Virus record (IMG/VR): IMGVR_UViG_3300042367_000228
Coordinates: 124,001-188,000 of that record
Reading direction: 5' to 3' (one strand)
Length of the DNA: 64,000 nucleotides
Made by a program: the position numbers and the translations under genes
In this document: positions 9,956 through 39,717 of the stretch, piece after piece
How the letters are laid out: the number at the start of each line of letters is the position of its first letter
Position numbering within the stretch: the stretch's first letter is position 1
Notes under the pieces: generated by a model
The model's input: the letters and a program-made list of their open reading frames with translations, nothing else
Database searches by the model: none
What the model was told of the DNA's origin: nothing

Positions 9956-9964
9956 GGAACATTC

Positions 9965-12900
9965 ATGGCAACACCAGAAATAATTACATTAAAGGAATTT
10001 AATGATGCACAAGTAATAGTAGCTAAGGTATTAGGTGCAGGGTCAGGAGATTACGGTTATAATCAAACAGTAACTAGTTCTCAACAACTATCAGTAACTG
10101 GACCTGAAGTTGCTAAGTTGCGTAATGATATATATCGAGCATTACATCATCAAAAAGGCGTAGCAAATGCTAATACATTAATGCCAGCATTTGTTGCACT
10201 TAACGGTACAGTATCTCAATCGATACGAATTGCAACAACTGGAACTCCGGCAATAGGAACTACTCCTGCAGTACTTGGTACAATAGATAGTGGTAGATTT
10301 TCAATGTTTACCGGTACTGGTGCAAAAGTAACTAATGCAGATACATTTCCTAATTTCATAACCGATCAAAATTGGAACGGAACAACTACACAAACTACTA
10401 CAGTAACGTTTATTGACGCAACTCATATGCGTTCTTTCTTTAATGCTGGTTCTACAATACAAATATTACCATCAAAATCTGGTGTTGTAACTGTAAAAAA
10501 TACAGCATGGACTAATTTGCTTAATTTAGGAACAATTACATTTCAACGTTCTGGTGTTACTACTGCATCAAAGCCATTAGTTACTGATACAACAGGCACT
10601 GGATTTGATACATTAACTAGTACTAATGCTGTTATTTTTTCAAGATCGTCAGATACAAAAACTGAAGTATATACAATTAATGCTAAATTAAGTGGTGATC
10701 ATACAATCATATTTACAAGTACATTTTCAAATTCTGGATCAGATGTTACTGGAACATTATCAAGTACTGTTAAATTATTGCGTGCAAGTTATGATCAAAC
10801 TGATATAGTTAATGTTACTACTTTAAGCATAGGAGCTCCAGTTAGCATCGTATCACTTGGATCAACTACTAATGAACAGTGGAATACATTAGCCGGAACA
10901 ACTGGCGTAACATATTCAGTAGGATCAGTACTTACTACAGTAGTAGCAGGTACGGGATTAGGTACCGGTACTGTTACGTTCCCATATGTAACTATTCCAG
11001 CACCTGGTGTTATATCAACAATAGTTCCTGGTTTAGCTAGTCCGACATATACAATTACTAAAAGTCCAGTTACTTCGCAAATTAGTGAAACAGGAGCATT
11101 TGTTTCAGTTTCATTTACAGTTAATACACATAATTATACCGGTACACACATTTATTATCGTATAGTTAAAGCTAACAGTAGTGCTTCGGATATCATCGAA
11201 GCTGATTTTGTAGATAAACCACTAGCAGGTGCTCTTGCAATTAATCAATCTACAGGTGTATCTGAAACATTAGCGTTAACTGCAAATGCAGATAATGCAA
11301 CAGAAGGGCTTGATAAATTTGATATTGAATTCCGTACAACAGAAAATGTAAATGATCCAGTAGTAACAAGCATTTTAAAAGCGTTTAACGATGTTCCTAT
11401 ATCAATTATAGATACGTCAATTACACCTAAAGTTATACCGCGCACGATACGATTTGCATCACTAGCGGCTGGTAAAATGTCTGCATCAACAACCGAAGGT
11501 GCTACAATATCGTTTGGTATTATTAGTACTGGGATATCAGAACCATATGATACAGTAACCTGGAGAATATATCCAGTAGCAACAAATCCAGTTGTTATTA
11601 CTGCATCAGATTTTAAAGAAGGGATTGAAGGCACATTTACTATGCCAAGCAACCAGCTGTATACATTAGATTTGCATATTAGTGCAGATACAGATGTTAC
11701 TGAAAAGTTAGAAGAGTTTCAAGTATATTTGTATCTAACTGATCCGGTTACAAATGCACCAAATAAAACTAAAAATGCTAATAGTTACATGGTGCAAATT
11801 GGTGCAGATGCGGCGTTGGTTACACAAGGATATGAGGTTCTCACACCATTGCAATTAACAACTGTAGAAGGCGATCCTGTTGGTATTTCAGTTCCTTTTA
11901 AAACACCATATCTACCACCTGCAGGACAGAAAGTATGGTATCGTATTTCAGCACCAGACTCATTAAATGCAGCAGATGGTGCAGATTTTACGGACGGGTT
12001 ATCATCTGGTTCGTGTCCAGTTACGGTAACTGGAAATTCTACTACAGGATCAGGGTCAGGTACTCTTAGAAAGTATGCAAAGAATGATAAAATAACGGAA
12101 GGTACTCAAGGGTTTATTGTAGAGTTTTTTAAAGATAGTGCATTTTCACAAAAATTTGGTGAAACTACTACATTAACAATTACAGAAAATGTTGGATATA
12201 CAGTCACACGGTCGACACCGTCAATGATTGAACCATTAGCCGATGGGTCAACTGCAGGAAAAGTAACAGAAATTACATTTACGTTAAATACTCCATTTAT
12301 TCCAAATTCTCCTGAAACACTAGTAGACTGGGAAGTTAAAAAAATTAATTCCGCCGGCGGAATTGGCGAATTTACTACTAACGATTTTATAGACGGAGAA
12401 ATTAATGGATCTAACCCAGTTGTCGATAATAAAGTAATAGTTACATTACGAGCAAATAACGACGGTCTAACAGAAGGAACTGAGCAGTTTTTTGTAAGAT
12501 TCACTTACCCAGACGGTGACGGTACTGCATATAAAGATAGTCCGATTGCATCAATTACTGAAACTGTTAAGTACACGATCGATGTAGCAGCTGGTAGCTC
12601 AACTTCAATGGTTGAAGCACTAGCGAGCAATTCTCAAGGTGTGGTATTTGATATTACTACGCCATTTTTACCACCAAATACACCGGTATATTGGGAAACA
12701 GTAGTTCCTGCAGGAAACAGGACTTCTAAATTTTTACCAAGTGATTTTGCTGATAATAAAACATCAGGCACGATTTATATAAATCAAGGTGGAACTATTA
12801 CTAATCAAGCAACTCTTACTAGAATTGCAATTATTGATACAGACATTGAAGGCAACGAAACATTTCAAATTATTTTAAAAACCGGAACTGCTAAATCGAC

Positions 12901-26603: not shown

Positions 26604-27041
26604 CTATAGTTTGTTAACTTTAAGGATTCCAAAATCTTGATCTGTAATATCAATACCTTCCGCTGCTGCAGCATTGTAACAGATATCTCTATACCAACGA
26701 CCTACAATTTCATCTTCTGGATCACCATCAAAACCGTACCCTTCTTGTTTTAATTTTTCAATCCAGTAATCATTCCAATCGATTTCAAAGAATCCGTTTC
26801 TGACATTGTCTGGATTAACTCTAAAACCGATTACATCTACCCATGGTTCTTGTTTTAGTGTTGCTTTTTCTTTTTCAGTTAACGGTGCTTTCTCGACAGC
26901 AACTTTAGCTTTTGGTTTAGCTTTAGTTTTTGGTTTAGCTTTTAACTGTTGTTTAGCTTTAATTGCCGCTTGTACTTCTTGTTGGTGTTTTAATTGTGGA
27001 TTTTCGCCACTAAACACTTTTTTTATAAAATTTCCAAACAT
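26604..27041 (-). CDS. Hypothetical protein
   Basis: 145 aa with KEKAT..EPWV...NGFFEIDWN; overlaps the queE stop. Confidence 0.6.
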   Translation of the reverse strand: MFGNFIKKVFSGENPQLKHQQEVQAAIKAKQQLKAKPKTKAKPKAKVAVEKAPLTEKEKATLKQEPWVDVIGFRVNPDNVRNGFFEIDWNDYWIEKLKQEGYGFDGDPEDEIVGRWYRDICYNAAAAEGIDITDQDFGILKVNKL

Positions 27042-27883
27042 TATGTTCCCCAGTTGTTGCCGAAGAGAGGGAGGTGAAGTCTATCACTATATCTCAATCC
27101 GTGTTGTAATGCAAGTTCAGCTACACGCTGATTATTAAGATTGTATACTTCAGTTACTCCGCCTACTGGCATTAAGTAAATTTCACCTTTAAATCCTTTA
27201 TCTTTGTATAACTGCATTACTTCGAGTGCTTCAGTAACATCATCTTCAGACGCTACTACAAACTTTAAATATGACCCATGCCCTGAAAATTGATATTCGG
27301 TTACAATTTCAGGACGTATCGCTTTTTCTCTAGGCTCACCACTTACACTTAGTTTAGGACTAATTGAAAACGTAGTTTGATACCGACGTTCTTGATATAA
27401 GTAATCTTCAAACGTGTTTAATAGTTCTTGTGTACCATTAGTTTCAAATGTAATGTTTTTTAAGTCTGCAAGTTTAGGATGTCTTAGTAATTCTGGATAT
27501 ATTTGTTGCCAACCTGGTAATAATGGTTCGCCGCCTGTAATTACTAAGTGTACTCCACCCCATTCACCGTTAGGTAACAGCGCAATCATTCTGTCTACAA
27601 TTTCATCAGTAGACATAGCTGGACTTAAATGCTTAAACTGCGGATATATCGCAGCATATGAGTCACAACCAGTAGTTACTAATGGAAGTAAATTATAGCT
27701 TGTATATAATGATGCAGATTTTGCAAGATCCAAAGCTTCCGTACTTAATTCACCGTTTTGCATTCCAAAACCTCTACAGCGAAAATTGCAACCAAATGTT
27801 CGTAAAAAAATTGACGGTACTCCCATAAATCGCCCTTCGCCTTGCAGTGAGTAAAATATCTCGCTTATTTTAATGTGTGACAT
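27041..27883 (-). CDS. queE: 7-carboxy-7-deazaguanine synthase (radical SAM)
   Basis: EIFYSLQGEG..GVPSIFLRT.GCNFRC..(insertion)..GCDS, VITGGEPLL, ETNGT, SPKL, RLH. Confidence 0.9.
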   Translation of the reverse strand: MSHIKISEIFYSLQGEGRFMGVPSIFLRTFGCNFRCRGFGMQNGELSTEALDLAKSASLYTSYNLLPLVTTGCDSYAAIYPQFKHLSPAMSTDEIVDRMIALLPNGEWGGVHLVITGGEPLLPGWQQIYPELLRHPKLADLKNITFETNGTQELLNTFEDYLYQERRYQTTFSISPKLSVSGEPREKAIRPEIVTEYQFSGHGSYLKFVVASEDDVTEALEVMQLYKDKGFKGEIYLMPVGGVTEVYNLNNQRVAELALQHGLRYSDRLHLPLFGNNWGT

Positions 27884-28671
27884 GTATTATCCTTGATTAA
27901 TTTAGTTATACCAAATTCTTTAAAAGATTTTCCAACAAACGTTGAAAACTCATTATGAATTGACGCAAATTTATGTGTTATAATAACATCATTATTAATA
28001 ATAGTCAATGTATTTTTAGTAAATGTTGGATAAACTGTTAGTAGTTCTTTACTAGTGTTACAAAATCCTTTAGGTGTACAGTAAGAGTATTTAGATGCAG
28101 TTTGGCTTCTAACTATAGATTGTTGACAAACTATGCGTGGTCGTTTACTAGCTTCTCTTTTTTTGTTAACAGTTGCTATACTGTCTTTTCTACCCTTTGC
28201 TAATGCAACATATATAATACCGTTATATTTGTCAAAAAGTTCTTTAGGAATTCGTTTAATTTCTAAAGTATTCAAATTTTTTGCAACCACTGTGCCTTTA
28301 CTATAATTACTTACAACCTTTGCATGCGATTCTCTAAGGTATGCATACACTCTATTGGTTATTTTATAAGATCGGCATACATCACCAGTTTTAGAATACA
28401 CCATTAAGTGTAATGCTTTAATCATTTTAGGACTATTTGTGCCTTTTGCTAATAATAAATGTGCTATATAATGATGCCTTGCACTTAACGTAATTAAGTT
28501 GTTAATATTATCTAATCCGCCAAATGACTTAGGAACGATATGATGAGTTTCGGTGTATTTGTCATTAAGTACTAAGGTTTTACAATGCTCAATAAATGTT
28601 ACATAGCGGGTTATATTATGATTGTTTGGATTTAAAGAATGTTTTAAAATATGTTGTTTATAGTCAGTCAC
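27865..28671 (-). mobile_element. Free-standing HNH homing endonuclease
   Basis: ETHHIVPKSFGG.D...NLITLSARHHYIAHLLL; basic C-terminus; overlaps the queE start. Confidence 0.8.
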
Positions 28672-29365: not shown

Positions 29366-30043
29366 TTATTTGTTTACAATACTCATAAATTCTGCACGAG
29401 TAGTTGGATCGTTTTTAAATGCACCACCTAACTTACTAGTAACAGTAGAACTGCCAGTATCTTCTACACCTCTTGCAGCAACACAATAATGTTTTGCATC
29501 AATAACTACTGCAATATTATCAGTGCCTAATATGTATTCTAATGCATGGAATACTTGTTCGGTTAATCTTTCTTGTACTTGCGGACGTTTTGCAAAGTAT
29601 TCAACTACACGATTAATTTTGCTTAGTCCAAGTACAACCTCGTTTGGAATATAACCAACTGTTGCAAAGCCGTCAATTACAACTCCGTGATGTTCACAAT
29701 TACTTTGTATGTTTACATTTCTTTCCACAACAATTTCATTGTAGCCCATTTTGTTTTTAATAGTAGTACACTTTGGAAAGTTTTCTTCTTTAAGTCCAAA
29801 ATATATTTCATTTGTGTACATTTTAGCCATTCGATTTGGTGTTTCTGCTAAACTATCATCTGTTAAGTCCATTCCTAATGTTGACCATATTGTTGTAAAT
29901 GCGTTTTCAATAATGTCAATTTTTGTTTTATTATCAACTACTAGGGCTGTATTATTAATCGGAGTTTCGACTCCTTTACTAATTAAATATTCTCTTACTC
30001 GTTTACCTAACGCTGGATCTGTTTTAGTTTTATCAAAGCTCAT
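29366..30043 (-). CDS. folE: GTP cyclohydrolase I
   Basis: ETPNRMAKMY, SNCEHH, GLSKINR, RPQVQERLT, HYCVAARGV. Confidence 0.95.
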   Translation of the reverse strand: MSFDKTKTDPALGKRVREYLISKGVETPINNTALVVDNKTKIDIIENAFTTIWSTLGMDLTDDSLAETPNRMAKMYTNEIYFGLKEENFPKCTTIKNKMGYNEIVVERNVNIQSNCEHHGVVIDGFATVGYIPNEVVLGLSKINRVVEYFAKRPQVQERLTEQVFHALEYILGTDNIAVVIDAKHYCVAARGVEDTGSSTVTSKLGGAFKNDPTTRAEFMSIVNK

Positions 30044-30057
30044 TATTTTAATTCCTG

Positions 30058-30918
30058 TTATATTTGTTTGTGATTTTTAAAAGTAGGTTTATCATGTTTC
30101 CAAATTAATCCAATTTGATAGCATTGTGTAGGATTATCGCTAATATCTTGATTAGTTCGGTATTTTCCTTTAAGTTCACCTTCAAAAATTATTCTCTGTT
30201 TAGAAGGTTTATTTAATCTACCATATGTAATATTATAATTGTTTTCTAAGTAAAAGTCAACATCTTTTTTAGATAAAAAATATTCAACATTGTTAATTAT
30301 ACACCATTTATACCCTTTAGTTGCAGATCTACCATACATGCCATTATTAGTACCTACTCTTGCCATAGTAGTGTTAGCACCAATTCTTGTTTTAATACCG
30401 GTTGTAACAATAATATCATGATGACTATTAGCCTCTTGTAAATCTAATAATTTAGATTTCTTAATAATAGTATGTTCTTTGATGTTAGTATTGTATACTG
30501 TAAATGTGTCTGTTCTTAGCCCAATGTGCGGTTGTAAGTTACGAACAGGGTTACTCCTTGCAGTTTGATGGGACACCCACCCTCTCTCACGAATATTTGT
30601 TATTTTATAGTTTCTAAATTCTAAAATTAATTTAGTCTCTAATTCTACTGCATCTTCTTCAGATAGATTAGTGGCTACTTTAAAAATTATTGGTAATAAC
30701 TGCAATCTAGTTAATTCTCTAATTGTGTTTAATTTATGTGAATTTTTATATTTTCGTGTAGGCCGTGCTTCTTTAAGATGATCAAATAATCGATTATTTT
30801 TACCGTAACCTACATAAAATGGTTTAAATAACAGTGAACAAAATGTAGAAACATATTGACCTGGTGTTCTTGGATCTAAGTATACATAGACATAGTATAT
30901 ATTGTTATTAGATGACAT
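30058..30918 (-). mobile_element. Free-standing GIY-YIG endonuclease with NUMOD3-like motif
   Basis: YYVYVYLDPR...PFYVGYG...R..H, ELETKLI, GTNNGMYGR. AAGGA RBS precedes the ATG at 30918. Confidence 0.78.
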
Positions 30919-30995
30919 ATAAGATTCCTTACTCCTTACATAATTGATTTTTAAAATGGGCATTCCTATCATGATTGCCCATTGTTATTTATTAG

Positions 30996-31157: not shown

Positions 31158-31497
31158 TTTTTACCTCCGATCTTGCTATTTCTAAAAACATTTGATATTT
31201 TTCGTATGCTGCTTTAACAGTTGGATTAGAATCTCTAACATACATATCTTCATAATATTTTTTATTCCAGTCTTCGCACTTTTCAGCTTTGTCAATTAAC
31301 TTTATAAAATCGTTCTCGTGTATTTTAACAGTTAATGACCGTGTAACGTTTGCTCTTTCGCTTGGTAGGTTTGATCTTGACCAATCTAACGAATAGTTAT
31401 CACCTGCAGCATAAAATTGTTCAACGTCTATGCTTCGTATACCGTGTTTCTTAGCTATTGAATGTAGTTCCATTATTTCTTCCAGTAGTTTTCCCAT
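31141..31497 (-). CDS. Hypothetical protein
   Basis: 118 aa ending in NPTVKAAYEKYQMFL. Confidence 0.55.
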   Translation of the reverse strand: MGKLLEEIMELHSIAKKHGIRSIDVEQFYAAGDNYSLDWSRSNLPSERANVTRSLTVKIHENDFIKLIDKAEKCEDWNKKYYEDMYVRDSNPTVKAAYEKYQMFLEIARSEVKNDRFN

Positions 31498-32003
31498 GGA
31501 AAGTCAATCCAAATCGGATCGTCTCGTTTATCAAATTCTTCAGCACAATAATCAACATGTGCATTGCTAGCAGAATTATCAAACACTGTAGCAAATCTTA
31601 CATTTTTATGCCAAACATCGTGTTTCCATCTTATAGAATCTGGTAAACATAATGATTGCCAATCTTCTTTAATCCAATCGAGTGTTGCACCCGAATCGTT
31701 AATATCGTCTACAATTAAAATGTTTTTAGCACGTCCGGTACTTGCTAGTTCGTCATCAGTAACACCAAATGCATCACAAGCCATCCATGCATTATGTTCA
31801 TTGTCGTCTGGATGGTCACGTAAACTAACATGTAATGTTAGCATCTTAACTCCGAGATACTGACTAAGTAAGTTAGCGGGGATAAGTCCCCCGCGTGTGA
31901 TTCCGACAATGTAATCTGGTTTCCAATTAGCAGCTTGAACTTGGCGTGCTATCTCTAATGCGGCACCTTCTAATTGTGCCCAACTATATTTTACTACTTT
32001 CAT
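31473..32003 (-). CDS. Type I purine phosphoribosyltransferase (Gpt-like)
   Basis: KPDYIVGITRGGLIPA, PRPP loop ILIVDDINDSGATL, WIDFPWE. Confidence 0.88.
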   Translation of the reverse strand: MKVVKYSWAQLEGAALEIARQVQAANWKPDYIVGITRGGLIPANLLSQYLGVKMLTLHVSLRDHPDDNEHNAWMACDAFGVTDDELASTGRAKNILIVDDINDSGATLDWIKEDWQSLCLPDSIRWKHDVWHKNVRFATVFDNSASNAHVDYCAEEFDKRDDPIWIDFPWENYWKK

Positions 32004-32431
32004 TCGTCGTCCTTTGGTAACATGCTATCCTCATAGCAAATTGCATAAATTGTTTTTAAATTTCCGTATGCTTTTTCTAAACCTGGATATTCGTCGCATA
32101 ACTTCTTAAATGCATCCCATTCTGGAAACGCATCTATAAAAGGTCGTCCGTTCATTGCAGTTGAGTTACTCCAGCTACCGTTACTACTTAATGTACTACC
32201 TCCTATTCCGTTATATGCATAGTAATTACTTGTTAAATTAGTAGCTATAGTATTATACCCGTATACACCATTAGAACCTGTGATAGTAATTGTATCACTT
32301 GCTGCTGCTGTTCCACTCATAACATTTGACGCCGTGTATGCCGATAATGTACTTGCATCGAACGCCGGTATACGAACATGTGCATCTCCATCCATAGTAA
32401 ATGTAATCGTATCTTTATTTGAATCTATCAT
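32000..32431 (-). CDS. Hypothetical protein
   Basis: 143 aa with a low-complexity N-terminus and C-terminal LCDEYPGLEKAY. Confidence 0.55.
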   Translation of the reverse strand: MIDSNKDTITFTMDGDAHVRIPAFDASTLSAYTASNVMSGTAAASDTITITGSNGVYGYNTIATNLTSNYYAYNGIGGSTLSSNGSWSNSTAMNGRPFIDAFPEWDAFKKLCDEYPGLEKAYGNLKTIYAICYEDSMLPKDDE

Positions 32432-33509
32432 ATAATTTCTCTGCGTTAAAAAACTCTTTTGTTAAATATTCTGCTTGGGTGTTTACATAATGCGCTATAC
32501 TATCATAGTTTTCTATATAATAAATAATTTTATTACATAAATCATAACTGTGCGTTTCGTAATTTTCGTAACTAATAGACCATTCTGACGGGTATTTAAA
32601 ATGATACATATACATTTCTTTATAACTTAGTCTATCGGGTACCATTGGTATAGCACCAAGCAATGCGCCTTCGTAACAACTTATGCCTAGGGTTTCTTGT
32701 AAGTTAGCACTAAACACAATCTTTGCTTCGCTTAATAATTTATGATATTCGTCTTTAGTTAGCTTCTCGTCTTGGCACACTACAAAATCGTATTGCGGTA
32801 ATTGCATAGCTAATGATCTAAAAATATCAACTTGTTTTTCTGGAGCAACCCTATGCGGAAACAATATTAGATCACGTTTTTCTGAATTTTTATAAGGAGT
32901 TAGCGTATCTTCTAAATACTCCATAGGCCAACCTGTTTTTATAATAGACCCATCGTCGTATATTTCGTCCCAATCCTCGTCGTACCATGGATTTTCACTT
33001 GGATAACCATTTTGTATAACATTGTTAAAAAACATTCTTACGTGAAACTCGGTAGCAAAATAGTTATGAGTGTATGCAGTGTACATACTTTTTTCAGCAA
33101 GTCTAACCCATGCGTCTTTAATATTACCTAAAAAGTCGTGTGGATCATAACTTCCTGCGTGCCATAGACCGTGGAATGTCCAATTTAGATGTTCTAAATC
33201 GTTAATGTACTTTAATTGTATAATAGTAGGATTCCATGCATCAGTAAATAAGAAATGATCATTAGGAGTAGTCCTGTGATAATTTTTTAAAAATCCAACA
33301 AGCTGAGAACTTTTCCATACGTTTGTGTCGACAAAGTTTAAAAATGCACCCGGAGTTACATCGGTTGCGTTTTGTTCGCCGTCTATTTGAATTATGTTGT
33401 ATTTGTCGTTAATATAATTGCTTAGTTGTTTAGGGATATGAGTGTGCCATTGTCTAGTATATCTAGTATCTAATGGTTCTACAGGAAATATCCAAATAGT
33501 AGGTTTCAT
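32415..33509 (-). CDS. GT-B (GT4-like) glycosyltransferase
   Basis: ILFPHRVAPEKQ, IVFSANLQETLGISCYEG...AIPMVPDRLSY.EM (ExxGxxxxE motif). Confidence 0.8.
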   Translation of the reverse strand: MKPTIWIFPVEPLDTRYTRQWHTHIPKQLSNYINDKYNIIQIDGEQNATDVTPGAFLNFVDTNVWKSSQLVGFLKNYHRTTPNDHFLFTDAWNPTIIQLKYINDLEHLNWTFHGLWHAGSYDPHDFLGNIKDAWVRLAEKSMYTAYTHNYFATEFHVRMFFNNVIQNGYPSENPWYDEDWDEIYDDGSIIKTGWPMEYLEDTLTPYKNSEKRDLILFPHRVAPEKQVDIFRSLAMQLPQYDFVVCQDEKLTKDEYHKLLSEAKIVFSANLQETLGISCYEGALLGAIPMVPDRLSYKEMYMYHFKYPSEWSISYENYETHSYDLCNKIIYYIENYDSIAHYVNTQAEYLTKEFFNAEKLYDRFK

Positions 33510-33815: not shown

Positions 33816-34028
33816 TTATTTTCTTCCGTTTTTTAATATAGTTTGATTAGTACGAACATTTAACGTGTGTTTTAATTCGTGTAGTTGTTGTCTAAGTTTT
33901 GTAATGTGTATCATATGCTTAGGTTTACTGTTACCTGATTGCATATTTTGTTTTTCATAATCAGTTATCTCTTGGCGTAAACGACTAATTTGTTGTTCAA
34001 GCATAGCTTTTGAGATATAATGTTTCAT
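33816..34028 (-). CDS. Small coiled-coil protein
   Basis: Likely start is MKHYISKAM at 34028. Confidence 0.45.
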   Translation of the reverse strand: MKHYISKAMLEQQISRLRQEITDYEKQNMQSGNSKPKHMIHITKLRQQLHELKHTLNVRTNQTILKNGRK

Positions 34029-34029
34029 G

Positions 34030-34188
34030 CTACATATACTTAATAAATGATCCGTTTTCACCATCTTCGGATACTTCAATCCACACTTCTTTGTGTAGAT
34101 ATTCATTTGTTATATTACAGTATAGATCATTACTTATCATTTCGCAACTTTTGTTATCTAATGATAATGTTAATACGTAGTGTTTCAT
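34030..34188 (-). pseudogene. C-terminal remnant of a second T-fold (DpdL/QueD-like) gene, 52 aa
   Basis: MKHYVLTLSLDNKSCEMISNDLY...VWIEVSEDGENGSFIKYM aligns with KSCEMIASDIL...VCVSEDGESDG of 34364-34741. Confidence 0.75.
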
Positions 34189-34275
34189 ATTAGTTGATAT
34201 TTATTATTTTAGTGAAAGTATAAATACAATATTAGTGAGATAGAACTATGCCTAAACTCAAAACCCTTAATAGTA

Positions 34276-34304
34276 ATTATACATGTTATTTGTGCGGTTG
34301 TCAA
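34276..34304 (-). promoter_or_regulatory. Consensus sigma70 promoter
   Basis: TTGACA-17-TATAAT. Confidence 0.65.
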
Positions 34305-34363: not shown

Positions 34364-34741
34364 CTATTTCATTAGATGACCTGCGTCAGTTGGCTGGTAT
34401 GTAACAATGCCATCAGATTCACCATCTTCAGATACACAGACTGTATAGTGCCTATCTCCATATTTAGGCAATAAATGATTAGTTAAAATATCACTAGCAA
34501 TCATTTCGCATGATTTGTAATTTTGATCACCTGCAGTGATAAAATCAGTTAATGCCCATTTAACCAAAAAAAACTCTAATTCTCTATCTAAGTGATTAAC
34601 AGAAATAGTTACTTCGATTTTAAAAATGTGACGATGTATATTTTCAAGAAATGCAATTTTAGAATCAATCAATCCTGCATTTGGGTAACAGTGCATACCT
34701 TCAAACTCTGTTCGAATTTTAATAAATGTTTGTAATTTCAT
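34364..34741 (-). CDS. T-fold QueD-like protein, probably DpdL-type
   Basis: FEGMH, LENIHRHIF (LxxxHRHxF rather than the QueD CxxxHGH), ELEF, SCEMIA, VSEDGE; lies in the deazaguanine cluster. Confidence 0.7.
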   Translation of the reverse strand: MKLQTFIKIRTEFEGMHCYPNAGLIDSKIAFLENIHRHIFKIEVTISVNHLDRELEFFLVKWALTDFITAGDQNYKSCEMIASDILTNHLLPKYGDRHYTVCVSEDGESDGIVTYQPTDAGHLMK

Positions 34742-35265
34742 TTAATTATCTTGTCGTCGTTATAGTCGGTCCAACTAGTAAACACATCTTCATTTTGCAA
34801 AACTTTTAAGTTATGTGTCCACACGCCGGGGTTAGTTGCGTTAAAATCTATGTCATCTAATTTAACCATTGTATTATAACTCCAATCTTTAATATTTGCA
34901 ACCGGAAATCTAATTTGAGGAATAAAATTTTCATATGAACATAAATTAGTTTTATTATTAAAATCATTCATTGCTGTAACCGGAATATCTAATGAACAGT
35001 GTTTGCCTAATTTTAAAAAGTGCTCAATAATGTTATTCCAGTTGAGCCAGGTACCTGGTGTGTTTGGATTAAAACTGTGGTTTGCACCAAAGAAGATATG
35101 TGTAATATCTTCTTCAGTATCTAACCGGTGATGTATTGCTTCTGTAGTATGAGCACCAACAACAAATAATGTTTTTAAACCATATGCTGGAGTATGCTCT
35201 ACTTCGGTACCAACAAAAAACTTAGCAGTGTTAGTAGTTATATTGTTATTATACTGTCTATTCAT
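34738..35265 (-). CDS. Uncharacterised protein of the deazaguanine locus
   Basis: 175 aa (FFVGTEVEHTPAYG.KTLFVVG, HIFFGANHSF, KLDDIDFNATNPGVWTH); translationally coupled to both neighbours. Confidence 0.6.
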   Translation of the reverse strand: MNRQYNNNITTNTAKFFVGTEVEHTPAYGLKTLFVVGAHTTEAIHHRLDTEEDITHIFFGANHSFNPNTPGTWLNWNNIIEHFLKLGKHCSLDIPVTAMNDFNNKTNLCSYENFIPQIRFPVANIKDWSYNTMVKLDDIDFNATNPGVWTHNLKVLQNEDVFTSWTDYNDDKIIK

Positions 35266-36931
35266 CTTTAATGCTATCTTCTAGGGTAAGTAAAGTGTCT
35301 TCTTCTTCTTCAGAAAATTCAAATGCCGTCGGATCGACATTATCCTCATCTATGTCGTTAGGATCTATATCTTCAAGTGTCCAAAACTCATTAAACTTTG
35401 TATCAGCATTGATTGTTTTCTTGCCACAATTACCACGTGTACCAGGAATATCAATCCATAATTTGCTATATCTACTAATTAATTTCAATGCAGAACGCTT
35501 AGTTTTACTGCTAATGATTTTATCAATTATATCGCTAACATAAACTGGATTAAATTTTTCATCAACTAACATATATGGCAAAATATTGTTATCAAATGTT
35601 TGATTTGCTCTTTGTACAGCATCAATATGACTCCATACATTATGCCCCATTAAAATAGCGTAACTAAAACTATCCCAACTTGTTCTACCGACTTTGTTAA
35701 TTTTATTCGTACTGCCCATAGTAATCCAATATTTAGGATCATTTAAGTATAGTGGGTTTTTAAATAAGTCTTCATGATCAATGCCATCATTGTCTACTTC
35801 TGTCCAGTTAGGATCACCTGCACCGTAGATACAAATATCTTTTATTTGTACTTGATCAATAAGTGGACTTGGATTAAACACTTTAAAAATACCATCATCG
35901 ATAACCGCGTCTTTAAACAGTCTAGTATCATATGCGTATTTTTTATTATCAACACTCGGGACCATTCGATACACCCATTTAGATCTATCTTCTAATTCTG
36001 TAGTAATGTAAACCTGACCATTTGCTGTAGCCAAAAACGGACTAGCACAATCATAACTAATAGTAAAGCTAGGATTAACATATTTACGAACTGCTCGTTG
36101 AATTATAGTTAGTAAACATGCCCATTCTAATTTACTAGTTCCTAAGAAATGCATCCAGTCGTGCTGGCCTTCTTGAAGCATGTTATCAAATTTTAAACCA
36201 ATAATGCGTTTAAGTACTAACTCGGCATCGCACATGTTTTGTCCACCCATTGCCCAGCCATTAAATGCTTTATCACCGTAGATCTTAGTATCGCAAAACT
36301 TTTTCATACTTTGATACCATTTTTCTGCATCTTTGTGTGTTTCGCCTTGTAATACATTTAAGAATTTACAAGCACCTGTGCGATTTTGAATAAAGTATTC
36401 ATTGTTAATAAATGTACCTTTAACTGCATCTTTGTAATTTCTAATACCTGTTGCTTTTCTACCAGCCGGCATACGTGCTACCCACGCAGGAATATCAAGA
36501 CACATACCGTAATCCATTAACTCGTCCATCCATCGCAGTACTTGTTCACGTTTCTTTTGTGCTTTAGGACAAGTAGGATCTTTCCAATCAGCTGGCCATA
36601 CACCTTTCCCTATTTGGAAGCCTCCAGAGTCACCTAACACCCAACTAGTACTTCTATCTCTATTACGGAACATGTCTTCACTTTCGTCAAACTTATCTAA
36701 ATCTAAGTTTGCATGTCCAGCTGAGTACAAGCACCATTTATAATAAAATTCACCTTTTTCAGGTTCTAAGTAGTTAAGTCCCTCTACACCTGCTTTAAAT
36801 GATGTTGGAATACGTAACGGATCAACATAATTACCATAACGTTGTTTACCAACAAATGTTGAGTAAAACCCTGACGTTGCAGGCAAAAACACGGCATAAT
36901 CCTGTTGTGTTGCTGTTAAGTTTCTATTCAT
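35258..36931 (-). CDS. dpdA: TGT-fold guanine transglycosylase (DpdA-like, presumed to act on DNA)
   Basis: GDSGGFQ catalytic motif, LD.P, NVLQG, WAMGG, MHFLG, YDCAS; clustered with folE and queE. Confidence 0.78.
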   Translation of the reverse strand: MNRNLTATQQDYAVFLPATSGFYSTFVGKQRYGNYVDPLRIPTSFKAGVEGLNYLEPEKGEFYYKWCLYSAGHANLDLDKFDESEDMFRNRDRSTSWVLGDSGGFQIGKGVWPADWKDPTCPKAQKKREQVLRWMDELMDYGMCLDIPAWVARMPAGRKATGIRNYKDAVKGTFINNEYFIQNRTGACKFLNVLQGETHKDAEKWYQSMKKFCDTKIYGDKAFNGWAMGGQNMCDAELVLKRIIGLKFDNMLQEGQHDWMHFLGTSKLEWACLLTIIQRAVRKYVNPSFTISYDCASPFLATANGQVYITTELEDRSKWVYRMVPSVDNKKYAYDTRLFKDAVIDDGIFKVFNPSPLIDQVQIKDICIYGAGDPNWTEVDNDGIDHEDLFKNPLYLNDPKYWITMGSTNKINKVGRTSWDSFSYAILMGHNVWSHIDAVQRANQTFDNNILPYMLVDEKFNPVYVSDIIDKIISSKTKRSALKLISRYSKLWIDIPGTRGNCGKKTINADTKFNEFWTLEDIDPNDIDEDNVDPTAFEFSEEEEDTLLTLEDSIKDE

Positions 36932-38549
36932 GTTTTTTCCATATATATGTTTTATTTCCGCAGTCCCAGATTCTATCATAATTATTATTTTTCATATTTT
37001 CCCATTCGGTTTTTGATAAATCAACAACTTCTAATAATTTAGATAATTTATGTTTTTGAAATTTAATTCTACTCATTATGCGAGACGGATCACTATTTAA
37101 AAAATACCAGTAATTTGGATCAGTATCGTGTATAAATTCAAAACCAAGTTGTGTATATAAATTACCAGTTGACCATCTTCTATCTGCATATGATACAATA
37201 CTACTCGGATTATGTAATTTTATAAAATGTTTAATTAATTTACTACCTGCACCAACTACTGTAGTATTCAATTTATTACAAAAGCGAATCAATTCCCACT
37301 GTGCAGCACTTGTATATCTAGCTTTTGCAAATGTAGCTAACGATACTAATTCACCATCAAACATTGCGCCAATATTTACACTTGACGAGCAATCACCTTG
37401 AATATGATTTTCATTTAAGAAGTTACGTTTATCTGTAGTTGATACGTCTATTATACTACAGTTTCGTGCAAAAATCTTGGTTGATTTATTCAATTTATGC
37501 AATAATTTTGATTTTATAATATCAGTTTGCGTGTTCCATTCATAATCCCATATTTGTATAAGTTGAATATTTTGCTGTTCACATGCAACAGTCTTTGATA
37601 CATGGTATTGTTTAGATTTTCCGTGAAGTTCGCTATGCCAAAAACTTCCATTAAACTCAATTGCAAGATTAAAATCCGGTAAAAAAATGTCAAGCTCACG
37701 TGGTGCAATGATTGTTCTATCATTTCTAATTATGTTTTGAGTGTAATTAGATAAAAAGTCAACTAAATTAGTTTCTCCGGCCGAAACATTAAATCGTTGT
37801 ATATCAATACCAGCTGCAACCAATCTTTTAAGTATCGGCGTTGGAGAACACCCTAGTTCTTCTGCAATTTGACTACATGGTTTCTTTAATGTTACATGCT
37901 GTTCTATAAGAAACTCAAGATTGTGCAATTTATCAATATTCTCATTAGTTAAATGAATATGTTTATTTGACGAAACACCAAACTTTTCAATACAAGTATT
38001 GTGACGTTTATCAATTACGTCATCCCAATTTCTATTAAGAGATGACTGACTAATTTTTAACTTAATCATATCATTTTTAGCTGCATTATCCACACCGTAC
38101 TTTTCTAAATTTCGTTGTTTGATTTTTTCTTTAATTTCTAAAGATTTAAATACGTTATCAACACCGTACTTTTCCATTGTAGCAGCATTTCGAGTTTCTC
38201 TAATAGTTTCATTGTGCATAGGATGACCGCCATACTTAGCTTGATTAGTTTGAGATTTTTTTAATAATATTGCAGGATCAGTGCCCATGCATTTAGCAGA
38301 GCACCATTCCGAATATGATTTTAAACTTTTAACAAACTTAGTAGATAGCTTTCCGCACCGGGTACAGGTTGGTACGTCAATCGTGTCATTAATAACGTGC
38401 CACAATCGTTGATGCGGAGTAGCAGTTTCGCTTAGAAAACTTGTAATGTCAATAAACTCAATAACATGTTCATCTAATATTGTACGTTTAGCAAATAATT
38501 CATTAGCAGTTGATTGCAATTGTATAGAATTATTCAACAGCTTTGTCAT
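36924..38549 (-). mobile_element. Hef/Vsr-like PD-(D/E)xK endonuclease with Zn finger, KYGVDN repeats and a C-terminal Mom-like GNAT domain
   Basis: CTRCG..WCSAKC, repeated EKYGVDN, ELDIF.P..LAIEFNG.FWH. C-terminal ELIRFC..VVGAGSKL..SYADRRWS.GNLY..LGF. Confidence 0.75.
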
Positions 38550-39688: not shown

Positions 39689-39717
39689 ATTATAATGTAT
39701 TTGTAGTGGGTTGTCAA
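39689..39717 (-). promoter_or_regulatory. Consensus sigma70 promoter
   Basis: TTGACA-17-TATAAT upstream of the clamp gene. Confidence 0.8.

What the first reader, a model, noticed from the sequence alone, without database searches (positions are those of the whole stretch)
34364..34741. T-fold protein carries LxxxHRHxF instead of the QueD CxxxHGH motif, and no canonical QueD is present
The sequence reads LENIHRHIF and lacks the QueD catalytic Cys. As I recall, this motif marks DpdL, the proposed CDG decarboxylase giving unsubstituted 7-deazaguanine. If so, QueD must come from the host or elsewhere in the genome. Otherwise this protein is a non-canonical QueD.
Basis: partly seen in the sequence, partly recalled or inferred. 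Interest (0 to 1): 0.6.

Follow-up and report, generated by a model that had tools for sequence, protein, structure and literature searches.

The report
DpdL-type QueD paralog in a jumbo phage

Summary
The ORF is real: 34364..34741, minus strand, 125 aa, with LENIHRHIF at residues 32-40. It is a DpdL-family protein. It is 32% identical over its full length to the founding DpdL, Cellulophaga phage phiST CGPG_00067 (E 6e-17). It is 39% identical to the Acidovorax phage ACP17 homologue. All 80 viral relatives examined carry LxxxHRHxF. A confident model (pLDDT 91.8) is a T-fold closest to PTPS and E. coli QueD (Z 12). An alignment with E. coli QueD keeps the metal histidines and two glutamates and puts Leu32 at catalytic Cys27.

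No canonical QueD lies in the window. The 372-kb phage genome encodes one (CxxxHGH, Pfam PTPS E 4e-29) 4.9 kb past the window end. It also has FolE, QueE and a TGT-like DpdA candidate, but no QueC.

CDG decarboxylation is still unproven for the whole family.

New here: the gene sits in a coupled DpdA-like/175-aa/DpdL operon. A GT4 glycosyltransferase, a 175-aa protein with no clear match among solved structures and, less often, a phosphoribosyltransferase co-occur with DpdL. The published DpdL study mentions neither a glycosyltransferase nor a phosphoribosyltransferase. A decayed second DpdL copy lies just downstream.

The parts
34364..34741 (-). DpdL-family T-fold protein (P0001, 125 aa). The metal triad is His17/His36/His38. 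Leu32 replaces the QueD Cys. Arg37, Glu79 and Glu105 are conserved.
34738..35265 (-). 175-aa protein of unknown function ('u175'). Its stop overlaps the dpdL start (ATGA). It is conserved between DpdA and DpdL in 42 of 80 related loci.
35258..36979 (-). 573-aa DpdA-like (TGT-superfamily) candidate DNA transglycosylase. It has DSGGFQ, QG, GG, HFLG and FDC motifs and overlaps u175 by 8 nt.
   Evidence: inferred; no Pfam TGT hit
34027..34227 (-). Decayed second DpdL copy. Only the C-terminal half remains (profile positions 56-119), with three in-frame stops. A 52-aa ORF at 34030..34188 survives.
32415..33509 (-). GT4-like glycosyltransferase with an E-x7-E motif. It is the orthologue of ACP17 ASD50404 and PA5oct EST35_0317.
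31473..32003 (-). Xanthine/guanine-type phosphoribosyltransferase (Pfam PF00156).
29366..30043 (-). FolE, GTP cyclohydrolase I.
   Evidence: PF01227, E 1.8e-58
27041..27883 (-). QueE-like radical-SAM enzyme. The best NCBIfam hits are all QueE models. Three Cys and TGGEP are invariant.
39689..39717 (-). Perfect sigma-70 consensus (12/12) upstream of the run of genes that ends with DpdA-like, u175 and DpdL. This is a consensus match only.
34276..34304 (-). Second perfect sigma-70 consensus, 60 nt downstream of the dpdL stop. It probably marks the start of the next transcription unit.

Best explanation
The gene encodes a DpdL-family enzyme, a paralogue of QueD/PTPS. It keeps the T-fold, the three metal-binding histidines (His17, His36, His38) and two active-site glutamates (Glu79, Glu105). 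It has lost the QueD catalytic cysteine (now Leu32) and the Asp-His dyad. The most likely pathway is as follows. Phage FolE, the phage QueD encoded outside the window, and QueE convert GTP to 7-carboxy-7-deazaguanine (CDG). No QueC exists to take CDG on to preQ0. DpdL then removes the C7 carboxylate at its metal site to give 7-deazaguanine. The co-transcribed TGT-like DpdA candidate swaps that base for guanine in phage DNA, which protects the DNA from nucleases that read guanine. Shown here: family membership, the fold, the retained and lost residues, the operon structure and the gene complement. Inferred: the decarboxylation itself, the free base as substrate, and dDG as the end product in this type of module. 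My confidence in family membership is about 0.95. My confidence in the decarboxylase mechanism as stated is about 0.55.
For: Sequence: the protein is 32% identical over its full length to phiST DpdL CGPG_00067 (E 6e-17) and 39% identical to ACP17 ASD50405. The motif is invariant in 80 of 80 relatives. Fold: the AF2 model has pLDDT 91.8. The top Foldseek hits are PTPS 2dj6 and E. coli QueD 4ntk, TM about 0.7. VIA gives Z 12.3 and 12.1, with rmsd 2.1 A over 106 residues to 4ntk. Homology to phage QueD: BLASTP E 3e-8 between family members and hhalign probability 84-87%. PTPS is the commonest sub-threshold Pfam hit, in 12 of 77 members. Residue mapping to E. coli QueD: H17=H16, L32=C27, H36=H31, H38=H33, with both Glu shared. 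Context: FolE, QueE and QueD are present. QueC is absent from this complete genome, from phiST, ACP17, BUCT-ZZ01 and PA5oct, and from 29 of 31 related viral records. The genome has no UbiD-type decarboxylase. A DpdA-like gene lies within 10 kb in 62 of 80 related loci. Literature: phiST DNA has all G replaced by dDG, and DpdL is the only candidate decarboxylase there (PMC10516641). PA5oct encodes the closest cultured relative of this DpdA candidate and shares the gene order, and its DNA resists restriction enzymes at G-containing sites (PMC12191111).
Against: No DpdL has been shown to decarboxylate CDG. Co-expression of phiST or ACP17 dpdL with dpdA in E. coli gave no dDG. dDG has been measured only in the phiST group, whose module has a short DpdA3 and no GT4 or u175. 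The window's module has a different DpdA type plus a GT4 glycosyltransferase and u175, and plain dDG does not explain why these are needed. Arg37 of the motif is Phe in PA5oct-type homologues, so it cannot be an indispensable carboxylate binder. The DpdA assignment rests on motifs and weak profile matches. No Pfam TGT hit was found.
Confidence: 0.55

Rival explanations
1. DpdL works at the nucleotide level, as in tubercidin biosynthesis. The clustered phosphoribosyltransferase joins CDG to PRPP. DpdL then decarboxylates the resulting 7-carboxy-7-deaza-GMP, taking the role that a UbiD enzyme has in tubercidin clusters. The product enters the nucleotide pool.
For: Tubercidin clusters lack QueC, use CDG and encode a PF00156 PRTase plus a decarboxylase (bioRxiv 10.64898/2026.04.15.718813). 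A PF00156 PRTase sits in this cluster. Homologues occur in BUCT-ZZ01 and the phiST group and in 26 of 80 related loci. Among 50,697 phage records only 11 have this PRTase, and 6 of them encode DpdL. The ancestral QueD substrate carries a triphosphate.
Against: ACP17 and PA5oct have DpdL but give no hit to this PRTase. A transglycosylase candidate is translationally coupled to dpdL. The PRTase could equally recycle the guanine released by base exchange.
Confidence: 0.15
2. In this module type DpdL does something other than, or in addition to, simple decarboxylation. The conserved GT4 glycosyltransferase and u175 then build a more elaborate, possibly glycosylated, 7-deazaguanine in DNA.
For: GT4 orthologues occur in 58 of 80 loci, next to DpdL. 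All 16 full-length GT4 hits among phage records are in DpdL-encoding phages. All 13 u175 hits are too. The E-x7-E motif is kept. The genome has no thymidylate-synthase-like hydroxymethylase that would supply another glycosylation target. The dpdL plus dpdA pair of ACP17 was inactive on its own.
Against: 7-deazaguanine offers no obvious sugar acceptor. phiST makes dDG without GT4 or u175. No mass data exist for any phage with this module type.
Confidence: 0.17
3. DpdA inserts CDG into DNA, and DpdL decarboxylates dCDG after insertion.
For: The authors consider that DpdA3 may insert CDG. dCDG occurs in one viral DNA.
Against: The model is a compact 125-aa T-fold with no extra domain, and T-fold active sites usually lie at interfaces between subunits (general knowledge, not tested here). 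The authors' model also pointed to action on the free base.
Confidence: 0.05
4. The protein is a non-canonical QueD that makes CPH4.
For: It has the same fold and the same metal triad as QueD.
Against: The catalytic Cys is Leu and the Asp-His dyad is absent. QueD is inactive without that Cys (PMC10516641). A canonical QueD is encoded in the same genome and next to DpdL in many relatives. There is no Pfam or NCBIfam PTPS/QueD hit.
Confidence: 0.03

Closest known systems
DpdL of Cellulophaga phage phiST (CGPG_00067) and Acidovorax phage ACP17 (ASD50405); PMC10516641
   Same: The length, the T-fold, the LxxxHRHxF signature and the three His plus two Glu shared with QueD are the same. Identity is 32% and 39%. 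The genomic context is the same: FolE, QueD, QueE and DpdA without QueC.
   Different: The window's module uses a long (573-aa) DpdA-like protein of the PA5oct type, not the short DpdA3 of phiST. It adds a GT4 glycosyltransferase and a 175-aa protein that phiST lacks. QueD is 35 kb from dpdL rather than in the cluster. A decayed second dpdL copy lies downstream.
QueD (6-carboxytetrahydropterin synthase, E. coli NP_417245.1, PDB 4ntk) and PTPS
   Same: The T-fold matches (Z 12.1, rmsd 2.1 A over 106 residues). The His16/His31/His33 metal triad and two Glu are conserved.
   Different: Cys27 is Leu and Gly32 is Arg. The Asp70-His71 dyad is absent. New invariant residues appear (H50, D52, R53, E56, R97, D106, E108). 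The protein falls below every Pfam and NCBIfam threshold for the family.
Tubercidin pathway (PRTase plus UbiD-family decarboxylase acting on CDG)
   Same: It is a QueC-less route that starts from CDG, removes the C7 carboxylate and includes a PF00156 phosphoribosyltransferase.
   Different: The decarboxylase there is a UbiD enzyme, not a T-fold. The product is a free nucleoside antibiotic, not a DNA base. No UbiD homologue exists in this genome.
PA5oct (Wroclawvirus) deazaguanine locus
   Same: The gene order matches: DNA polymerase, then the DpdA-like gene (38% identical), GT4 (43%), the DpdL homologue, QueE and RNase H. PA5oct DNA resists G-site restriction enzymes.
   Different: PA5oct DpdL has HFH, not HRH, and is only 27% identical. 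Its u175 homologue lies 28 kb away. No PRTase hit was found.

Membership tests
DpdL (proposed CDG decarboxylase) | QueD/PTPS-like T-fold paralogue | tested here: met
   AF2 pLDDT 91.8. Foldseek and VIA top hits are PTPS/QueD, Z 12. Family members match phage QueD at E 3e-8.
DpdL (proposed CDG decarboxylase) | Signature LxxxHRHxF in place of CxxxHGH | tested here: met
   LENIHRHIF at residues 32-40. It aligns column for column with CGRLHGHSF of E. coli QueD. It is invariant in 80 of 80 relatives.
DpdL (proposed CDG decarboxylase) | Three His and two Glu shared with QueD, with the fourth His displaced | tested here: met
   H17, H36, H38, E79 and E105 are invariant with E. coli QueD. H50 does not align with QueD His71.
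DpdL (proposed CDG decarboxylase) | Sequence similarity to the founding members (phiST CGPG_00067, ACP17) | tested here: met
   E 6e-17, 32% identity over the full length. E 2e-12, 39% identity. The worst hit within the family is E 7e-22, against E 0.7 for the best QueD hit.
DpdL (proposed CDG decarboxylase) | [quoted passage not shown] | tested here: met
   FolE, QueE and QueD are present. There is no QueC in the complete genome. The DpdA candidate rests on motifs and hhalign only.
DpdL (proposed CDG decarboxylase) | Converts CDG to 7-deazaguanine, with dDG in virion DNA | not testable with these tools
   This is unproven even for the founding members.
QueD / PTPS (PF01242, TIGR03367) | Scores above the family HMM thresholds | tested here: not met
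   No Pfam or NCBIfam hit even at E 0.1 to 1.
QueD / PTPS (PF01242, TIGR03367) | Catalytic Cys in CxxxHGH and the Asp-His dyad | tested here: not met
   Leu32 sits at the Cys27 column, and there is no D-H at the QueD 70-71 columns.
QueD / PTPS (PF01242, TIGR03367) | His triad for the metal | tested here: met
   H17, H36 and H38 align with H16, H31 and H33.
DpdA / TGT superfamily (for the 573-aa neighbour) | TGT catalytic motifs in order (DSGGFQ, QG, GG, LG, FDC) | tested here: inconclusive
   All the motifs are present and colinear with E. coli Tgt and with the ACP17/BUCT DpdA-type proteins. The statistics are weak: hhalign 74% with E 3e-5 and 10% with E 3e-3. The Atlas feature score is 0.93 to a TGT-like cluster. 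No PF01702 hit was found.

The most novel reading that the evidence does not exclude
In the module type seen here, the genes are a long DpdA-like protein, u175, DpdL and a dedicated GT4 glycosyltransferase, sometimes with a PRTase. The end product may not be plain dDG. It may be an undescribed, further elaborated (for example glycosylated) 7-deazaguanine in DNA. DpdL and the 175-aa protein with no clear match among solved structures would then carry out chemistry not yet assigned to any enzyme. This would also explain why dpdL plus dpdA alone were inactive in E. coli.
Probability: 0.17. Interest if true: 0.8.

Novelty: new member of a known kind. Interest (0 to 1): 0.42.

Why it matters
DpdL is the only proposed enzyme for making unsubstituted 7-deazaguanine in DNA, and its activity has never been shown. 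This locus adds a well-defined member in a complete 372-kb phage genome. The family is large: at least 582 viral contigs and 1,091 protein clusters. DpdL usually travels with a specific GT4 glycosyltransferase, often with a 175-aa protein with no clear match among solved structures, and less often (26 of 80 loci) with a phosphoribosyltransferase. These are concrete candidates for the 'other unknown enzymes' that the original authors invoked when reconstitution failed. They define a simple add-back experiment. They also raise the possibility that most DpdL phages make something more complex than dDG.

Tried and rejected
- Megablast of 10 kb around the gene against 50,697 phage records found no match.
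- Pfam and NCBIfam scans of the protein found nothing. PHROGs gave only an unknown-function family.
- Profile HMMs of the family against PDB sequences gave only chance hits such as bacterioferritin and thioredoxin.
- hhalign with small alignments gave 4% probability. It became usable only with deeper alignments, and then only for the C-terminal half. The global mode mis-registers the N-terminal half.
- The TGT Pfam model found nothing in the genome or in 38 DpdA-like relatives. A profile of these against PDB sequences found nothing. hhalign to the phiST DpdA3 type gave 2.6%.
- For u175, Foldseek against PDB gave nothing below E 0.07. The VIA wide search gave a best Z of 6.6. Three QueE structures appeared at Z 5.5 to 6.5 and the Atlas gave TM 0.58 to a QueE cluster. 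hhalign against phage QueE was negative. I therefore treat the likeness to QueE as a lead only.
- The Atlas feature search for u175 was uninformative.
- Complex prediction on u175 plus DpdL returned no verdict. This is no evidence either way.
- No supplementary files of PMC10516641 are held, so the published list of DpdL accessions could not be checked. That ASD50405 is the ACP17 'dpdL' of the paper is my inference. It is the only LxxxHRHxF protein found in that genome, and it lies in the QueD-FolE-QueE cluster.
- The large representative-protein search was not run. The word search and the viral-contig scan had already settled the family.

Full report
THE OBSERVATION

The ORF at 34364..34741 on the minus strand is present as described. 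It has an ATG start and encodes 125 residues (P0001). Residues 32-40 read LENIHRHIF. The window is bases 124001-188000 of a 372,016-bp viral record with direct terminal repeats, rated complete. It is therefore part of a jumbo phage genome.

Standard family scans do not recognise the protein. Pfam and NCBIfam give nothing, and PHROGs gives only an unknown-function family.

WHAT THE PROTEIN IS

The paper that defined DpdL (PMC10516641) describes a QueD paralogue in Cellulophaga phage phiST, CGPG_00067. In that protein the QueD signature CxxxHGH has become LxxxHRHxF. [quoted passage not shown]

I fetched the phiST record and compared the two proteins directly.
- They are 32% identical over the full length, E 6e-17, and phiST reads LSLNHRHLF at the motif.
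- The ACP17 homologue, whose gene the authors also tested, is 39% identical.
- The closest cultured relative is an unannotated protein of Synechococcus phage BUCT-ZZ01, at 64% identity.

The family is large.
- The word search finds 1,091 clusters at 90% identity.
- At least 582 IMG/VR contigs encode a relative.
- All 80 fetched relatives carry LxxxHRHxF.
- In a 77-sequence alignment the invariant residues are G15, H17, L32, H36, R37, H38, F40, V48, D52, R53, E56, F57, S77, C78, E79, R97, E105, D106 and E108. H50 is nearly invariant.

Fold:
- An AlphaFold2 model built on that alignment is confident (pLDDT 91.8, pTM 0.83). It has the beta-beta-alpha-alpha-beta-beta order of a T-fold.
- The best Foldseek matches are PTPS from Pyrococcus (2dj6), the PTPS homologue SCO6650 and E. 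coli QueD (4ntk), with TM about 0.7.
- The second-look aligner gives Z 12.3 and Z 12.1. The match to 4ntk has rmsd 2.1 A over 106 residues and is colinear, model residues 3-115 against chain residues 2-120.
- Other T-fold enzymes (dihydroneopterin aldolase, FolX, QueF-like, GTP cyclohydrolase I) follow at Z 8-11.

Sequence-level homology to QueD is faint but real.
- Some family members hit phage QueD at E 3e-8 across helix 2 and the last two strands.
- hhalign gives 84-87% probability.
- PTPS is the commonest sub-threshold Pfam hit among family members, in 12 of 77.

An alignment that includes E. coli QueD NP_417245.1, the reference used in the paper, places the residues as follows.
- H17 lies on His16.
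- L32 lies on Cys27.
- H36 lies on His31.
- H38 lies on His33.
- Both conserved glutamates are shared.
- The QueD Asp70-His71 region has no counterpart.

This reproduces the published description point by point. P0001 clusters firmly with DpdL. Its worst hit within the family is E 7e-22, and its best hit to any phage QueD is E 0.7.

THE MISSING QueD

The Pfam PTPS model finds exactly one match in the whole genome, at 192916-193437. The ORF there spans 192907-193440, so it begins 4,907 bases after the window ends. It encodes a 177-aa protein with C-K-H-L-H-G-H. It scores E 1.8e-28 against PF01242 and E 2e-33 against the PTPS-like structure 3jyg.

The host need not supply it.

THE REST OF THE PATHWAY

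- FolE is at 29366..30043 (E 2e-58).
- A QueE-like radical-SAM enzyme is at 27041..27883. Its five best NCBIfam hits are all QueE models, and three Cys and TGGEP are invariant among relatives.
- QueC is absent from this complete genome.
- QueC is also absent from phiST, ACP17, BUCT-ZZ01 and PA5oct, and from 29 of 31 related viral records. The two exceptions are weak matches to the N-terminal part of the QueC model only.
- The genome has no UbiD-type decarboxylase.

The 573-aa protein immediately upstream (35258..36979) is the DpdA candidate.
- It carries DSGGFQ, shared with the DSGGLQ of the ACP17 and BUCT-ZZ01 proteins.
- hhalign links the two groups at 74% probability, E 3e-5, over 196 columns.
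- The QG, GG, HFLG and FDC motifs align in order with E. coli Tgt.
- A language-model search points to a TGT-like cluster.
- No Pfam TGT hit was obtained, so I mark this assignment as inferred.
- Its nearest cultured relatives are PA5oct-type jumbo phages, at 38% identity. They share the window's gene order from the DNA polymerase to RNase H.
- PA5oct DNA resists restriction enzymes at sites that contain G (PMC12191111).

OPERON ANATOMY

- The DpdA-like gene overlaps the next gene by 8 nt.
- That gene, a 175-aa ORF (u175, 34738..35265), overlaps the dpdL start in an ATGA.
- Perfect sigma-70 consensus sites lie upstream of the gene run (39717-39689) and 60 nt after the dpdL stop (34304-34276). 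These are consensus matches only.

WHAT RECURS AROUND DpdL

I screened 10 kb on each side of the DpdL gene in 80 viral loci.

| Feature within 10 kb of DpdL | Loci (of 80) |
|---|---|
| DpdA-like, window/PA5oct type | 54 |
| DpdA-like, ACP17/BUCT type | 5 |
| DpdA3, phiST type | 3 |
| GT4-like glycosyltransferase | 58 |
| u175 | 42 |
| FolE | 52 |
| QueE | 47 |
| QueD | 24 |
| Phosphoribosyltransferase | 26 |

The order DpdA, u175, DpdL, GT4 on one strand is the rule.

GT4 glycosyltransferase:
- The window's copy (32415..33509) is orthologous to ACP17 ASD50404 (E 7e-61) and PA5oct EST35_0317 (E 2e-95), and keeps an E-x7-E motif.
- Among 50,697 phage records, all 16 full-length hits are in DpdL-encoding phages.

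u175:
- All 13 hits among phage records are in DpdL-encoding phages.
- It folds confidently (pLDDT 93.3) but has no clear match in the PDB.
- It shows a weak likeness to the QueE partial barrel that profile comparison does not confirm.

Phosphoribosyltransferase:
- Only 11 phage records have it, and 6 of them encode DpdL (BUCT-ZZ01 and the phiST group).

The three loci with a phiST-type DpdA3 lack both GT4 and u175. There are therefore two module types. The one in which dDG was actually measured (phiST) is not the one in this window. The DpdL paper does not mention a phosphoribosyltransferase or a glycosyltransferase.

MECHANISM

Best supported: FolE, QueD and QueE make CDG. With no QueC, CDG is the branch point. 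DpdL uses the retained His triad and glutamates to decarboxylate it. The DpdA-like enzyme then exchanges guanine in DNA for 7-deazaguanine.

The decarboxylation step is inferred, not shown. The authors' own co-expression of dpdL and dpdA from phiST and ACP17 gave no dDG.

Three rivals remain open.
- A nucleotide-level route like tubercidin biosynthesis, which also lacks QueC and pairs a PF00156 PRTase with a decarboxylase.
- A more elaborate end product that needs GT4 and u175.
- Decarboxylation after CDG has been inserted into DNA.

The 'non-canonical QueD' reading is rejected on the missing Cys, the missing dyad and the co-existing canonical QueD.

A SIDE FINDING

A search of the genome with the DpdL profile finds a second match at window 34027-34227, 137 nt downstream of the dpdL stop codon.
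- It covers only the C-terminal half of the protein and has three in-frame stops. A 52-aa ORF survives.
- It is 40% identical to the intact copy but 61-67% identical to DpdL of the other main clade.
- A close relative (L007) has the same remnant.
- This looks like an older dpdL allele that was displaced by the present one.

VERDICT

This is a new member of a known, though biochemically unproven, family. The added value is the conserved set of accessory genes around DpdL. A complex prediction for u175 with DpdL gave no verdict, and I do not use it as evidence.

Noticed in passing
window 34027-34227 (-), ORF 34030..34188: This is a decayed second DpdL copy. Only the C-terminal half remains, with 1 TAG and 2 TAA in frame. 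It is 40% identical to the intact DpdL but 61-67% identical to DpdL of the other main clade. The related contig L007 has the same remnant at 9956-10087. It suggests that one dpdL allele replaced another.
   Followed up: partly
window 32415-33509 (-): A GT4-like glycosyltransferase (E-x7-E motif) is a near-constant companion of DpdL. It occurs in 58 of 80 viral loci, and all 16 full-length hits among 50,697 phage records are in DpdL phages. The DpdL paper does not mention a glycosyltransferase. Its target is unknown, and the genome has no thymidylate-synthase-like hydroxymethylase.
   Followed up: partly
window 34738-35265 (-): A 175-aa protein is translationally coupled to dpdL through an ATGA overlap. 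It is found only in DpdL-encoding phages (13 of 13 phage records; 42 of 80 viral loci). The model is confident (pLDDT 93) but has no clear PDB match. It shows a weak likeness to the QueE partial barrel, yet none of its Cys is invariant across relatives, so it has no conserved Fe-S cluster motif. The ACP17 homologue ASD50402 seems to be annotated about 87 nt too short.
   Followed up: partly
window 31473-32003 (-): A xanthine/guanine-type phosphoribosyltransferase lies in the cluster. It is rare in phages (11 records), and 6 of those records encode DpdL. It may recycle the guanine released by base exchange. It may instead ribosylate CDG, as TubE does in tubercidin biosynthesis.
   Followed up: partly
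L003, L004, L006 and 19 viral loci; own QueD at L001:1492-2025: The QueD co-encoded with DpdL in most relatives reads CxxxHGY, with Tyr at the third metal-ligand position. This genome's QueD is the canonical CxxxHGH and resembles PDB 3jyg (E 2e-33).
   Followed up: no
L005:9001-9378 (PA5oct and 10 related records): PA5oct-type DpdL homologues read H-F-H instead of H-R-H. The Arg of the published signature is therefore not universal.
   Followed up: no
window 27865-28671 (-), 30058-30972 (-), 36924-38549 (-): Three ORFs are interspersed among the deazaguanine genes: an HNH endonuclease ORF, a GIY-YIG (LEM-3-like) endonuclease ORF and a 541-aa DUF7487 ORF. They look like homing-endonuclease insertions. 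PA5oct has a Hef-like homing endonuclease that splits its polymerase nearby.
   Followed up: no
window 27041-27883 (-): In the QueE-like protein the three invariant cysteines are spaced C32-x3-C36-x36-C73. This is a long insert inside the cluster-binding motif, and relatives share it.
   Followed up: no
window 39689-39717 (-) and 34276-34304 (-): Two perfect 12/12 sigma-70 consensus promoters with 17-nt spacers bracket the gene run that ends with DpdA-like, u175 and DpdL. The total number of promoter-like sites is not above shuffled controls.
   Followed up: no
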